The position numbers and the translations under genes were made by a program. Positions 1,387 to 18,869 of a stretch of DNA of 64,000 nt are shown piece by piece (the stretch's first letter is position 1; each line of letters starts with the position of its first letter). A model generated the notes under the pieces. That model worked only from the letters and a program-made list of their open reading frames with translations, was not told where the DNA came from and ran no database searches. The DNA is from Macrostomum lignano (taxonomy: Eukaryota). Location: assembly GCA_002269645.1 (NCBI GenBank), contig NIVC01000591.1, forward strand, positions 124,001 through 188,000. The letters are read 5' to 3'.

Positions 1387-1862
1387 TGAGTTAGAGGGTG
1401 TAAAATTATTATAGAATACAACACAGTACAATTTAATACAAGTCGTATAAGAAACGTTTTAATGTATTTTAATGCGGTTATCAGAATTAAACCAAATGTA
1501 AAATGTAAAAACATTGCTCACTTTTAACCACCAATCTGCGAGATCGACTCTCTGTACCTTTCCCTCCTGTTAATTCCCTTCTGCAAGCAGCAACTGCTGC
1601 TAATTCCCTCAGACCCCAACTGCTATTCCATCCGGTACAGAGTTGGCACCATTCAGCGGGGGTCCGGGGGTCACCCGGCCGTCGCGCCGACCCCCGCAGC
1701 GCTCGCAGCCGCCGCAGCCGCGCCCGCCTCGTGCCGCTGCCGCCCCCCGCTGTGCCGCAGAGTCCCAGGCTGAAAACCCGAGCGTCACTGCAGCTGGGGG
1801 ATTTGCGGCTCTCCGCAGCTCAACTGTCTATGGCCGGCCTCCCGCTGCGGCTGGGGACTCTC

Positions 1863-1951
1863 ATTGGCTCTGAGCTGCCAGCCAATAGGAGCGAAGCTGC
1901 CCCCACTCAGCCTGAGGCGGCTGGGTTGGCGACCTGGGAGACACCATAAAA
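1863..1951 (+). promoter_or_regulatory. Possible core promoter of CCCH copy A: inverted and direct CCAAT boxes plus CATAAAA in a GC-rich region
   Basis: ATTGG at 1863-1867, CCAAT at 1882-1886 and CATAAAA at 1945-1951; all are conserved in copy B. Motif match only. Confidence 0.3.
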
Positions 1952-2079
1952 CTGTGGCTCACCAGAAATGTTGGTTCTTCATTGTTGCTGAGCACTGAGT
2001 CCGCCGGTCCGGGCTTCTGATAAAGACTCTCAACTCTTCACCTGCCGTGTGCTTGATTTACCAATTTTTCACTCTGGAA

Positions 2080-3237
2080 ATGAGCTGCACCTCTGCATCT
2101 AGCGACGTAAGTTTTGTGACTTCAAATTTGGTGTTTAGATAGATAGATAGATAGATAGATAGATAGATAGATAGATAGATAGATAGATAGATAGATAGAT
2201 AGATAGATAGATAGATAGATAGATAGATAGATAGATAGATAGATAGATAGATAGATAGATAGATAGATAGATAGATAGATAGATAGATAGATAGATAGAT
2301 AGATAGATAGATAGATAGATAGATAGATAGATAGATAGATAGATAGATAGATAGATAGATAGATAGATAGATAGATAGATAGATAGATAGATAGATAGAT
2401 AGATAGATAGATAGATAGATAGATGGATAGATAGATAAACAGATAGATAGATATATAGATAGATAGATAGATAGACAGATAGATAGATAGATACATAGAT
2501 AGATAGATACATAGATAGATAGATACATAGATAGATAGATAGATAGATAGATAGATAGATAGATAGATAGATAGATAGATAGATAGATAGATAGATAGAT
2601 AGATAGATAGATAGATAGATAGATAGATAGATAGATAGATAGATAGATAGATAGATAGATAGATAGATAGATAGATAGATTGATAGATAGATTGATAGAT
2701 TGATAGATAGATAGATAGATTGATAGATTGATACGTAGACAGATAGATCTCAATCCAATCTCAATCCCACCTCAATCCCATCTCAAGCCCATCTCAAGCC
2801 CATCTCAATCCCACCTCAACCCCATCTCAATCCCACCTCAACCCCATCTCAATCCCACCTCAATCCCAATTCCAGATGAGCTGCAACGCCAGCAGCTGCA
2901 GCAGCGGCAGCCTGGATGAGCAGCGGGAGCTCCTCAAGACTGAGCTTTGTCGCTACTTTGAGGTACAGTGCAGCGCTGAGTTTGAGTACCTACTCATGTA
3001 ATACCATAGCTACTCAGGAACATGCACACCCCTTCATTTACCCACATACCTCCTTCCCTTCAACACTGGCAGATGGGCAGCCCGTGTCCCTACTCAAGCA
3101 GCTGCAAGTTCGCTCACGGCCAGTGTGAGCTGAAGCAGCGGCAGAGGCCGAGGAACTACAAAACCAAGCAGTGCCGCTCATTTCACGGGCCGTCAGGGAT
3201 TTGCAAATACGGCTCTCGATGCCAATTCCTGCACTGA
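2080..3237 (+). CDS. Tandem CCCH zinc-finger protein (TTP/ZFP36/TIS11-like), 92 aa, copy A; exons 2080-2106, 2876-2962, 3073-3237
   Basis: Spliced translation MSCTSASSD|MSCNASSCSSGSLDEQRELLKTELCRYFE|MGSPCPYSSSCKFAHGQCELKQRQRPRNYKTKQCRSFHGPSGICKYGSRCQFLH*. Finger 1 is C-x8-C-x5-C-x3-H, the linker is 18 aa, finger 2 is C-x9-C-x5-C-x3-H, with KTELC/YKTKQC lead-ins. GT-AG sites at 2107/2875 and 2963/3072 keep frame. The exon-1 start is the least certain part. Confidence 0.85.
2137..2870. repeat. (AGAT)n microsatellite (~600 bp) plus 11-bp (AATCCCACCTC) minisatellite in CCCH-A intron 1
   Basis: Directly visible. The mirror in copy B is at 17885-18250, where the (ATCT)n tract is only about 135 bp. 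Confidence 0.95.
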
Positions 3238-3381
3238 ATAATCGCTAAATGCCCTATGCGCTTCGATTGCTACTCACAACAGTAGTGTTTTCATATCAGC
3301 TGACTGATCTTCAATGAGTTTTGTAAATATGCTTTCATACCCGCTTCGGCGATTTTCTTACCGTAGTATTTTTTTGAGGTT

Positions 3382-16900: not shown

Positions 16901-17090
16901 ATGTAGGGAGGTGCAGGGAGATGCAGGGGGATGCAGAGGATGTAGGGAGATGCAGGGGGATGCATAGGATGTAGGGAGATGCAGAGGGACGAATAAGATG
17001 TAGGGAGATGCAGGGGGATGCATAGGATGTAGGGAGGTGCAGGGAGGGGCAGGGAGATGTAGGGAGGTGCAGGGAGATGCAGGGAGGTGC
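4915..17090. repeat. 12.2-kb G-rich satellite; 29-bp base unit GCAGGGGGAT-GCATAGGAT-GTAGGGAGAT with 10-bp variants and higher-order repeats
   Basis: Continuous tandem array. The C-rich strand has almost no stop codons, which explains the 400-2448 aa minus-strand ORFs. Confidence 0.97.
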
Positions 17091-17520
17091 AGTAAAATGC
17101 AGTTCTCTTTAGGCGATCAAATTAAATTTTGGTCATTACGAGCTGATTTGCGCGGTAAGGAAACGATTGAAATTCATTCAAGCACTTTATATTTGATCAG
17201 AAATAGAATCTTTTATTAATAATGTGACATGACACACAGAACAGCGTAGGTGCAGATACAGCTAATACTCGTTTTACCATAATACAACAAAGCAAATAGA
17301 AATATTATTAAACAGCTGGATATTAGGAGCAGAAAGGCGTTGACTTGACAGCAATGTATATTATTAAATAAAACCTCAACAAAATACTACGGTAAGAAAA
17401 TCGCCGAAGCGGGTATGAAAGCATATTTACAGAATCATTGAAGATCAGTCAATCGCAGCTGATATCAAAACACTACTGTTGTGAGTAGCAATCGAAGCGC
17501 ATAGGGCATTTAGCGATTTT

Positions 17521-18307
17521 TCAGTGCAGGAATTGGCATCGAGAGCCGTATTTGCAAATCCCTGACGGCCCGTGGAATGAGCGGCACTGCTTGGTTTTGT
17601 AGTTCCTCGGTCTCTGCCGCTGCTTCAGCTCACACTGGCCGTGAGCGAATTTGCAGCTGCTTGAGTAGGGACACGGCCTGCCCATCTGTCAGTGTGGTGA
17701 GAGGTGGGTATGCAGGTAAATGAAGGGATCATGTGCATGTTCCTGGGTGGGTATGATTACATGAGTAGGTACTCAAACTCAGCGCTGCACTGTACCTCAA
17801 AGTAGCGACACAGCTCAGTCTTGAAGAGCTCTCGCTGCTCATCCATGCTGCCGCTGCTGCAGCTGCTGGCGTTGCAGCTCATCTGGAATTGGGATGGAGA
17901 TGGGATTGAGGTGGAATTGAGGTGGGATTGAGGTGGAATTGAGGTGGGATTGAGATGGGATTGAGATGGGGTTGAGATGGGGTTGAGATGGGTCTGAGAT
18001 GGGATTTGAGGTGGGATTGAGATGGGATTGAGGTGGGATTGAGATGGAATTGAGGTGGGATTGAGGTGGGATTGAGATGGGATTGAGATTTGATTGAGAT
18101 GGGATTGAGATGGGATCTATCTATGTATCTATCTATCTATCTATCTATCTATCTATCTATCTATCTATCTATCTATCTATCTATCTATCTATCTATCTAT
18201 CTATCTATCTATCTATCTATCTATCTATCTATCTATCTATCTATCTATCTAAACACCAAATTTGAAGTCACAAAACTTACGTCGCTAGATGCAGAGGTGC
18301 AGCTCAT
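17521..18307 (-). CDS. Tandem CCCH zinc-finger protein (TTP/ZFP36/TIS11-like), 92 aa, copy B; exons 18281-18307, 17796-17882, 17521-17685
   Basis: Reverse-complement paralog of copy A with identical exon lengths (27/87/165 nt). 8 substitutions in 279 nt (5 synonymous, 3 non-synonymous); all Cys/His ligands intact. Confidence 0.85.
17885..18250. repeat. 11-bp (GAGGTGGGATT) minisatellite plus (ATCT)n in CCCH-B intron 1
   Basis: Directly visible; mirror of 2137-2870. Confidence 0.95.
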
Positions 18308-18869
18308 TTCCAGAGTGAAAAATTGGTAAATCAAGCACACGGCAGGTGAAGAGTTGAGAGTCTTTATCAGAAGCCCGGACCGGCGGACTCCGTGCTCAGC
18401 AACAATGAAGAACCAACATTTCTGGTGAGCCACAGTTTTATGGTGTCTCCCAGGTCGCCAACCCAGCCGCCTCAGGCTGAGTGGGGCAGCTTCGCTCCTA
18501 TTGGCTGGCAGCTCAGAGCCAATGAGAGTCCCCAGCCGCAGCGGGAGGCCGGCCATAGACAGTTGAGCTGCGGAGAGCCGCAAATCCCCCAGCTGCAGTG
18601 ACGCTCGGGTTTTCAGCCTGGGAAAACTGCGGCACAGCGGGGGGCGGCAGCGGCACGAGGCGGGCGCGGCTGCGGCGGCTGCGAGCGCCGCGGGGGTCGG
18701 CGCGACGGCCGGGTGACCCCCCCCCCGGACCCCCGCTGAATGGTGCCAACTCTGTACCGGATGAAATAGTAGTTGGGGTCTGAGGGAATTAGCAGCAACT
18801 GCTGCTTGCAGAAGGGAATTAACAGGAGGGAAAGGTACAGAGAGTCGATCTCTTTCACTGTCCCTTAGT

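What the first reader, a model, noticed from the sequence alone, without database searches (positions are those of the whole stretch)
1540..18851. Palindromic, tail-to-tail pair of mini TTP-like genes wrapped around a 12-kb satellite
Two convergent copies of a 3-exon tandem-CCCH gene form the arms of a ~17-kb palindrome. The arms continue into the same satellite, which is 0.77 kb on one side and 12.2 kb on the other, with only a ~0.5-kb unique spacer. Coding divergence is 8/279 nt with 5 synonymous changes, while the 110-bp intron 2 is visibly more diverged. Both copies therefore look constrained rather than being an assembly echo. Read-through or overlapping transcription could give a ~2-kb dsRNA stem (endo-siRNA), and the arms could undergo gene conversion.
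Basis: partly seen in the sequence, partly recalled or inferred. Interest (0 to 1): 0.75.

Follow-up and report, generated by a model that had tools for sequence, protein, structure and literature searches.

The report
Inverted flatworm zinc-finger gene pair
Two slightly diverged copies of a tiny tristetraprolin-like RNA-binding gene of the flatworm Macrostomum lignano lie tail to tail around a 12-kb satellite; this looks like an ordinary inverted gene duplication in a very repeat-rich, recently polyploid genome, and the assembly across the satellite still needs checking.

Summary
Arms 1540-3662 (+) and 18852-17093 (-) are 94-100% identical outside microsatellites. Each carries a 3-exon, 279-nt gene with 8 differences (5 synonymous, 3 not). 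The arms run into inverted satellite arrays of 769 bp and 12,178 bp around a 483-bp spacer.

The window is Macrostomum lignano: the left copy's product equals UniProt A0A1I8IW08. The 92-aa protein is little more than a TTP/ZFP36-type tandem CCCH domain. It has degenerate lead-in motifs, a C-x9-C second finger and no NOT1-binding tail.

- dN/dS is 0.14 (p=0.008).
- Divergence along the arms runs from 0.3% to 12%. That is too uneven for plain subgenome homeologues and fits an older duplication with patchy gene conversion.
- UniProt holds both a left-type and a right-type paralogue from elsewhere in the genome, so both lineages are real genes.
- The "unique" spacer is not unique. An 81% identical copy at 735-1018 also sits between inverted arrays, so an inverted-satellite module existed without gene arms and probably seeded or mediated the inverted duplication.

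A mis-join across the 12-kb array cannot be excluded, because published assemblies of this species are highly chimeric. The dsRNA/endo-siRNA idea is untested and has no support in the sequence. Interest is modest.

The parts
1540..3662 (+). Left palindrome arm: upstream region, 3-exon TZF gene, 3'UTR and about 100 bp up to the satellite
   Evidence: Inverted-repeat blocks. Per-segment identity.
1793..2106 (+). Left gene exon 1: 5' leader plus the first 27 nt of CDS (2080-2106). An in-frame TGA at the position that differs between the arms (1996) closes the upstream frame in this copy.
   Evidence: The exon1-exon2 junction (SASSD|MSCNASS) is the same as in UniProt A0A1I8IM40.
2107..2875 (+). 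Left intron 1 (769 nt) holding a (TAGA)n array (2136-2748) and an 11-mer array (2747-2868)
2876..2962 (+). Left gene exon 2 (lead-in and first half of finger 1). The UniProt 83-aa models start at its ATG.
2963..3072 (+). Left intron 2 (110 nt), the most diverged unique segment between the arms (87.9% identity)
3073..3237 (+). Left gene exon 3 CDS (rest of finger 1, 18-aa linker, finger 2, stop codon)
3238..3560 (+). Left 3'UTR with AATAAA at 3536 and one UUAUUUAUU nonamer, which the right copy has lost
3663..4431 (+). Left satellite array, C-rich strand. It is GGTGCAG-rich next to the arm, and next to the spacer it is a 19-bp variant resembling 287-527.
4432..4914 (.). Central non-coding spacer, paralogous to 735-1018 (81% identity, same orientation)
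4915..17092 (+). Right satellite array, G-rich strand. Periods are 29/58/87 bp with a recurrent offset of about 1.4 kb between shared 40-mers. It has 51 canonical G4 motifs and is homogeneous along its length.
17093..18852 (-). Right palindrome arm (mirror of 1540-3662)
17521..18307 (-). Right gene CDS span: exons 18307-18281, 17882-17796, 17685-17521; introns of 398 and 110 nt; AATAAA at 17217
287..1400 (.). Module A: C-rich array (287-527), spacer (528-1126) and G-rich array (1127-1400). It is a paralogue of the palindrome centre but has no gene arms.

Best explanation
This is most likely a genuine inverted (tail-to-tail) segmental duplication in the Macrostomum lignano genome.

What was duplicated. 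The unit is about 2.1 kb and carries one small gene. The gene encodes a 92-aa protein that is essentially a bare TTP/ZFP36-type tandem CCCH zinc-finger (RNA-binding) domain.

When and how (inferred). The duplication predates the split of the species' three subgenomes. Its centre is an inverted-satellite module (C-rich array, 0.5-kb spacer, G-rich array) of a kind that also exists nearby without gene arms. Such a module probably acted in one of two ways:
- as the hairpin for fold-back (snap-back) priming after a break;
- as the substrate for an inversion between inverted arrays.
Either route places a second, inverted gene copy behind the module. Afterwards the arrays expanded and contracted independently (0.77 vs 12.2 kb).

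Since then. Both genes stayed under purifying selection. Patches of the arms, especially the promoter and 5' leader, were probably homogenised by gene conversion (inferred).

What is shown and what is inferred. Shown: the anatomy, the selective constraint, the uneven divergence, and the existence of both gene lineages elsewhere in the genome. Inferred: the formation mechanism, the conversion, and the biochemical role. The likely role is AU-rich-RNA binding without the deadenylase-recruiting tail, so the protein would act as a competitor or stabiliser rather than a decay activator.
For: Anatomy and arm identity.

Species and gene: the left product is 100% identical to UniProt A0A1I8IW08 of M. 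lignano. A neighbouring DDHD exon is 98% identical to another M. lignano protein.

TZF domain: Pfam zf-CCCH twice; PDB TIS11d and TTP at E about 1e-15 and 1e-13; Foldseek best hits 1rgo and 6nzl.

Constraint: dN/dS 0.14, Fisher p=0.008.

Not plain homeologues: intron 2 has 13 substitutions where about 2.4 are expected at the 2.2% genome-wide paralogue rate (p about 1e-6). Region 1763-2135 has 1 where about 10.5 are expected (p=3e-4).

Both lineages are real. UniProt A0A1I8IM40 (two entries) is right-type: it differs from the right copy's conceptual product at 2 of 187 residues and shares its frame state, its open leader, F29 and R41. A0A1I8IW08 and A0A1I8HFP7 are left-type. That makes at least 5 gene copies, where 3 subgenomes with 2 copies each would give 6.

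Not a haplotype fold-back: no homology continues outside 1540/18852 anywhere in the window.

Pre-existing inverted-satellite module: 287-1400 has the same array polarity and an 81% identical spacer. A third inverted-array module lies at 20478-21781.

The large array shows no two-domain break that would mark a join.
Against: - Physical linkage of the two arms rests on assembly through a homogeneous 12.2-kb tandem array. That is as long as, or longer than, many reads used for the published assemblies (my own knowledge).
- 36% of the length of the Mlig_3_7 assembly lies in S/L-chimeric scaffolds.
- Mean arm divergence (about 2.8%) is close to the inter-subgenome SNP rate of 1.9-2.4%.
- No independent assembly, reads or related species could be reached with these tools.
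- The satellite arms are not mirror-collinear beyond about 110 bp, so they carry no direct trace of the duplication event.
- The left/right lineage split at protein level rests on few characters.
Confidence: 0.6

Rival explanations
1. Assembly chimera. Two real paralogous loci, each with the gene followed by the same satellite family, were joined in inverted orientation. This could happen because the G-rich array of one locus overlaps the reverse complement of the C-rich array of the other. The palindrome would then not exist on any chromosome.
For: - The 12.2-kb array is homogeneous and the same family occurs in both orientations in the window.
- 36% of Mlig_3_7 assembly length is in chimeric scaffolds, and 93% of read pairs map to multiple loci.
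- Overall arm divergence is similar to inter-subgenome divergence.
Against: - The flanks outside the arms share no homology, so this is not a join of two homeologous copies of one locus.
- Divergence from 0.3% to 12% is unlike typical homeologues.
- There is no discontinuity in the composition of the array.
- More than three distinct gene versions exist, so an extra duplication is real in any case.
Confidence: 0.25
2. Foldback-type transposable element. The inverted satellite arrays with a central loop would be the terminal inverted repeats of a Foldback-like transposon. The gene copies would have been captured in, or mobilised with, its arms.
For: Three array-spacer-inverted-array modules lie within 22 kb (287-1400, 3663-17092, 20478-21781). 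Two of them have homologous spacers. The arrays are built of about 10-bp subunits with higher-order periods, as in Drosophila FB arms (my own knowledge of FB elements).
Against: - I saw no target-site duplication at the module or arm boundaries on reading the sequence.
- The spacers contain no transposase ORF.
- The spacer of the third module is unrelated to the other two.
- The gene arms end at unique sequence, not at repeat termini.
Confidence: 0.05
3. Functional hairpin-RNA locus. Read-through transcription across the centre would yield a long hairpin that is diced into endo-siRNAs regulating the TZF gene family.
For: The arms could pair over about 2 kb at 94-99% identity outside the arrays. 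M. lignano has Dicer-2, Argonaute and RdRP genes according to PMC8191739.
Against: - Each copy has its own AATAAA about 125 nt before the satellite.
- The loop would be more than 13 kb of G4-prone satellite, with 51 G4 motifs.
- The coding sequence shows protein-level constraint.
- No small-RNA or RNA-seq data could be consulted.
Confidence: 0.05

Closest known systems
TTP/ZFP36 family tandem zinc-finger domain (TIS11d/ZFP36L2, PDB 1RGO; TTP, 1M9O)
   Same: - Two CCCH fingers 18 residues apart.
- KTELC and YKTK lead-ins.
- Conserved aromatic residues (CPY, CKF, CKY, CQF).
- 50% identity to TIS11d over the whole domain.
   Different: - Only 92 aa, and the protein ends at the last zinc-binding His, so there are no N- or C-terminal effector regions and no NOT1-binding tail.
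- The finger 1 lead-in is L(L/F)KTELC instead of (R/K)YKTELC.
- The finger 2 lead-in is NYKTKQC, and the Cys1-Cys2 spacing is 9 residues, not 8.
Small nematode TZF regulators (POS-1, MEX-5; PDB 6NZL, 6PMG)
   Same: Short, lineage-specific TZF proteins with diverged lead-ins. POS-1 is the second-best structural match.
   Different: There is no orthology: identity is about 45% and confined to the domain. Expression and targets in the flatworm are unknown.
Gene-bearing palindromes with arm-to-arm gene conversion (primate X/Y ampliconic palindromes)
   Same: Inverted arms carrying a small expressed gene, a non-duplicated spacer, and uneven arm divergence compatible with conversion.
   Different: The arms are only about 2 kb against tens of kb to Mb. 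Arm identity is 94-99.7%, not above 99.9%. The spacer region is dominated by an asymmetric satellite. Conversion is inferred, not shown.
Short-inverted-repeat-primed palindrome formation (Tetrahymena rDNA, yeast and CHO gene-amplification models; recalled from my own knowledge)
   Same: A pre-existing short inverted repeat with a loop lies exactly at the centre, and the arms begin directly outside it. A 'naive' copy of the module exists nearby.
   Different: There is no evidence of a break, an amplification or a dicentric intermediate. An inversion between inverted arrays would give the same end product.
Drosophila Foldback (FB) elements
   Same: Inverted arms made of short tandem repeats around a loop. 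Arm lengths are variable and asymmetric.
   Different: No target-site duplications, no conserved termini and no coding partner were found.

Membership tests
TTP/ZFP36 tandem CCCH zinc-finger family | Two C-x8-C-x5-C-x3-H fingers | tested here: inconclusive
   Finger 1 is C34-x8-C43-x5-C49-x3-H53, which is exact. Finger 2 is C72-x9-C82-x5-C88-x3-H92, one residue longer between Cys1 and Cys2. Pfam zf-CCCH matches both fingers.
TTP/ZFP36 tandem CCCH zinc-finger family | 18-residue spacing between the fingers | tested here: met
   From H53 to C72 there are 18 residues (GQCELKQRQRPRNYKTKQ). The defining spacing is quoted in PMC12710939.
TTP/ZFP36 tandem CCCH zinc-finger family | (R/K)YKTEL lead-in before each finger | tested here: not met
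   Finger 1 has LLKTELC (left copy) or LFKTELC (right copy): no basic residue, and Leu or Phe at the Tyr position. Finger 2 has NYKTKQC. Y154H at this Tyr abolishes RNA binding in ZFP36L2 (PMC12710939).
TTP/ZFP36 tandem CCCH zinc-finger family | Base-stacking aromatic residues in each finger (Tyr after Cys2, Phe after Cys3) | tested here: met
   CPY45, CKF51, CKY84 and CQF90 align with the corresponding TIS11d residues.
TTP/ZFP36 tandem CCCH zinc-finger family | C-terminal NOT1-binding/effector region | tested here: not met
   The stop codon follows the last His directly (3235-3237 and 17523-17521). The UniProt models end at the same residue.
TTP/ZFP36 tandem CCCH zinc-finger family | Binding to UAUUUAU-type AU-rich elements | not testable with these tools
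   Needs EMSA or fluorescence anisotropy with recombinant protein.
Gene-bearing palindrome maintained by arm-to-arm conversion | Two inverted arms of high identity around a non-duplicated spacer on one molecule | tested here: inconclusive
   This is present in the window sequence. Continuity through the 12.2-kb array cannot be verified without reads.
Gene-bearing palindrome maintained by arm-to-arm conversion | Evidence of conversion (identity tracts, mosaicism) | tested here: inconclusive
   Region 1763-2135 has 1 substitution in 373 bp, against 12% in intron 2. Constraint on the promoter and leader could contribute, and no outgroup was available.
Foldback-type transposon | Terminal inverted repeats built of tandem repeats around a loop | tested here: met
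   Modules 287-1400, 3663-17092 and 20478-21781.
Foldback-type transposon | Target-site duplication and conserved termini in several copies | tested here: not met
   No direct repeat was seen flanking the arms or the modules (sequence read). The spacer of the third module is unrelated.
Hairpin-RNA / endo-siRNA locus | One transcript containing both arms, and small RNAs from both strands | not testable with these tools
   No expression data were available. Polyadenylation signals at 3536 and 17217 argue against routine read-through.

The most novel reading that the evidence does not exclude
The palindrome is real and functional. Occasional read-through from either copy would produce a long hairpin whose siRNAs tune the dosage of the whole six-copy TZF family across the three subgenomes. 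The G4-prone satellite centre would act as a regulated barrier. More broadly, inverted-satellite modules would be a recurrent engine of palindromic gene duplication in this neopolyploid flatworm.
Probability: 0.06. Interest if true: 0.6.

Novelty: new member of a known kind. Interest (0 to 1): 0.3.

Why it matters
If the structure is real, it is a compact, datable example of an inverted gene duplication centred on a pre-existing inverted-satellite module, with a nearby 'before' state (module A). That could show how tandem arrays drive structural change after whole-genome duplication in M. lignano. The gene is also a natural 'domain-only' TTP-family protein. One of the three amino-acid differences between the copies falls on the lead-in tyrosine position that is critical for RNA binding in ZFP36L2, so the pair is a small natural experiment in TZF function. 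If the structure is an assembly chimera, it is a useful flag for a mis-join type (flip through inverted satellite arrays) in assemblies of this species.

Tried and rejected
- Fold-back read or 'echo' artefact: rejected. The arms differ by 39 substitutions, several indels and large array-length differences, and the centre is asymmetric.
- Inverted join of two homeologous copies of the same locus: disfavoured. No unique sequence from 1-1540 recurs, on either strand, anywhere in the rest of the window (masked self-BLAST), and targeted local alignments against 18853-22563 score no better than shuffles (z at most 1.7).
- Mirror collinearity of the satellites as a trace of the duplication: not found beyond about 110 bp.
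- A join point inside the 12-kb array: none was visible in the k-mer similarity matrix.
- Homology between the outer flanking arrays (1127-1400 vs 18853-18960): not significant (z=2.1).
- General homology among the roughly 0.5-kb inter-array spacers of the window: none apart from the A/B pair.
- A coding or RNA-gene function for the central spacer: no ORF of note, no Rfam family, no tRNA.
- Independent contigs carrying the gene: the exact-product look-ups for P0001 and for the exon-3 ORFs of both copies found nothing.
- Close orthologues for dN/dS across species: HMMER against 1.84 billion representatives gave 7,340 TZF hits, but nothing above about 62% identity except the protein itself.
- Literature on Macrostomum CCCH/ZFP36 genes: none found.
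Full report
**1. Observation**

The inverted repeat is real and far beyond chance. Outside microsatellites, 1540-3662 pairs with 18852-17093 in blocks that are 92-100% complementary. Each arm carries the same three-exon gene.
- Left copy: 2080-2106, 2876-2962, 3073-3237 (+).
- Right copy: 18307-18281, 17882-17796, 17685-17521 (-).
- All introns have GT..AG borders. Intron 2 is 110 nt in both copies.

The 279-nt coding sequences differ at 8 sites: 5 synonymous and 3 replacements (L22M, L29F, S41R). 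Intron 2 is 87.9% identical. The arms abut inverted arrays of one satellite family. The basic unit is a 29-mer, AGGGAGATGCAGGGGGATGCATAGGATGT, built from about 10-bp subunits. The C-rich array is 769 bp (3663-4431) and the G-rich array is 12,178 bp (4915-17092). They flank a 483-bp spacer.

**2. Where the window comes from**

[quoted passage not shown] An exon of a DDHD-domain gene further along the window is 98% identical to another M. lignano protein. Tandem repeats make up 56% of the window, in 33 arrays with mostly unrelated units. This fits what is published for the species. [quoted passage not shown] In PMC10733133 there are three subgenomes and about 70% of the assembly lies in 3-copy blocks. 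Paralogue SNP rates there are 2.2% genome-wide and 1.1% in CDS. About 36% of assembly length lies in chimeric scaffolds.

**3. The gene**

The 92-aa protein is an N-terminal Ser/Cys-rich stretch followed by a tandem CCCH domain, and it ends at the last zinc ligand.
- Pfam zf-CCCH matches twice.
- PDB sequence search finds a C3H1-type domain-containing protein (9y10, E=1.8e-15), TIS11d (1RGO, E=2.7e-15), TTP (1M9O) and POS-1 (6NZL) over the whole domain.
- An AlphaFold model (pLDDT 69 overall, about 80 in the fingers) finds 1RGO and 6NZL as best folds.
- The 18-residue linker and the stacking aromatic residues are conserved.

Three features depart from the family definition.
- The finger 1 lead-in is L(L/F)KTELC and the finger 2 lead-in is NYKTKQC, instead of (R/K)YKTELC.
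- Finger 2 has C-x9-C.
- There is no C-terminal effector or NOT1-binding region.

The L29F difference between the copies sits at the lead-in tyrosine. Its mutation (Y154H) abolishes RNA binding in ZFP36L2 (PMC12710939).

HMMER against 1.84 billion representatives gave 7,340 TZF hits, but nothing closer than about 62% identity outside the protein's own cluster. The gene is therefore a lineage-specific, domain-only member of the TTP kind. My inference is that it binds AU-rich RNA but cannot recruit CCR4-NOT, so it would protect or compete rather than destabilise. This is untested.

**4. Selection and the pattern of divergence**

Nei-Gojobori counting gives dS=0.099, dN=0.014 and omega=0.14 (Fisher p=0.008), so both copies are constrained.

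Divergence along the arms is strikingly uneven:

| Segment | Divergence |
|---|---|
| 1541-1794 | 2.8% |
| 1763-2135 | 0.3% (1 substitution and 1 indel in 373 bp) |
| exon 2 | 4.6% |
| intron 2 | 12% |
| exon 3 | 2.4% |
| 3'UTR | 2.2% |

The cold 5' block and the hot intron are both improbable under a uniform rate (p=3e-4 and p about 1e-6 to 1e-5). Plain subgenome homeologues should sit near 2%. The pattern fits an older duplication whose arms have been partly homogenised by gene conversion. Constraint on the promoter and leader may contribute as well.

**5. Both lineages exist elsewhere**

The same 90% cluster holds A0A1I8IM40 (two UniProt entries) and A0A1I8HFP7.
- A0A1I8IM40 is a 5'-extended model that reads through exon 1 into exon 2. 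This confirms the exon 1-exon 2 splice.
- A0A1I8IM40 differs from the right copy's conceptual product at only 2 of 187 residues. It shares the right copy's frame state at the 1900 indel, the absence of the left copy's TGA, and F29 and R41.
- A0A1I8IW08 and A0A1I8HFP7 are left-type.

That makes at least five gene copies in two lineages. Three subgenomes each carrying one left-type and one right-type gene would give six. This is indirect but independent support that the duplication is real and older than the subgenome split.

**6. The centre is a recurrent module**

The 'unique' spacer has an 81% identical paralogue at 735-1018, in the same orientation. That paralogue also lies between a C-rich GCATCTCCCT-type array (287-527) and a G-rich GGGAGATG-type array (1127-1400). 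The spacer-proximal part of the left array resembles 287-527. A third inverted-array pair, with an unrelated 604-bp spacer, lies at 20478-21781. So inverted-satellite modules exist in this region without gene arms.

The simplest history is that such a module lay downstream of a single gene. It then did one of two things:
- it served as a snap-back hairpin that primed copying of the gene in reverse after a break;
- it recombined with another inverted array to flip a neighbouring tandem copy.

Both routes give gene, C-array, spacer, G-array, inverted gene. The arrays have since turned over. Mirror collinearity is lost about 110 bp from the junctions, and their variant composition differs.

**7. 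Real structure or artefact?**

A fold-back read artefact is excluded by the divergence and the asymmetry. An inverted join of two homeologous copies of one locus is disfavoured, because none of the unique sequence left of 1540 recurs anywhere in the rest of the window. The large array shows no compositional break.

A mis-join between two different family loci through the homogeneous 12.2-kb array cannot be excluded from sequence. The known chimerism of assemblies of this species makes that a serious rival. I give it about 0.25, against about 0.6 for a real palindrome.

**8. The dsRNA idea**

The two mRNAs are both sense, so they are not complementary to each other. Double-stranded RNA would require read-through past AATAAA (3536 or 17217) and across more than 13 kb that holds 51 canonical G4 motifs. 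M. lignano has the small-RNA machinery (PMC8191739), but nothing here argues for such a transcript, and no expression data were available. I rate it about 0.05.

**9. Comparison and verdict**

The finding is an inverted segmental duplication, or small palindrome, carrying a lineage-specific TTP-type gene. It sits in a genome where duplicated blocks and tandem arrays are the norm. It works like known gene-bearing palindromes and like products of short-inverted-repeat-primed duplication. It is not a strict TTP-family member by lead-in and effector criteria, and it fails the target-site-duplication test for Foldback elements. I file it as a new member of a known kind, of modest interest (0.3). 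Its main value is as a clean local example with a nearby 'before' state, and as a check on assembly quality.

Noticed in passing
window 1-64000: Tandem repeats make up 56% of the window. There are 33 arrays of 0.2-12 kb with mostly unrelated units (periods 4-318 bp). They are separated by strikingly regular unique spacers of about 0.4-0.8 kb that share no detectable homology apart from the pair 528-1126 / 4432-4914.
   Followed up: partly
window 20478-21781: A third inverted-satellite module: a G-rich 23-mer array (20478-20694) and its reverse complement (21299-21781), 83-88% complementary, around a 604-bp spacer. Its polarity is opposite to that of the modules at 287-1400 and 3663-17092.
   Followed up: partly
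window 32639-37127: A Ty3/gypsy-type LTR retrotransposon with 220-bp LTRs that are 98% identical. It has two long ORFs on the + strand, gag-protease-RT and RNaseH-integrase. It is inserted into a 31/32-bp tandem array that continues on both sides (32412-32638 and 37128-37500), so it looks like a recent insertion.
   Followed up: partly
window 30871-40091 (- strand): Exons of a DDHD-domain gene (40091-39936, 39129-39037, 31395-30871), 98% identical to UniProt A0A1I8JN51 of M. lignano. Its 7.6-kb last intron holds the LTR element and several tandem arrays.
   Followed up: partly
window 21804-27386 (- strand): Long ORFs on the minus strand (257, 189, 164 and 124 aa) each sit inside one of the inter-array spacers. 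None has a Pfam match. They may be exons of an unannotated gene whose introns are each filled by a different tandem array.
   Followed up: no
window 60161-60670 (- strand): An ORF with the N-terminal part of a DEAD/DEAH-box helicase domain (Pfam E=6e-15), presumably an exon of a helicase gene.
   Followed up: no
window 3382-3390 vs 17371-17363: The left copy's 3'UTR has a perfect UUAUUUAUU nonamer, the optimal TTP-family binding site (chance about 0.03 for this UTR). The right copy has UUAUUUAAU. This hints at autoregulation retained in only one copy.
   Followed up: partly
window 1900 and 1996 vs 18487 and 18391: In the right copy the reading frame stays open through the whole 5' leader, which is why UniProt A0A1I8IM40 is a 187-aa model. 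In the left copy a 1-nt indel and a G-to-T change that creates a TGA close that frame.
   Followed up: yes
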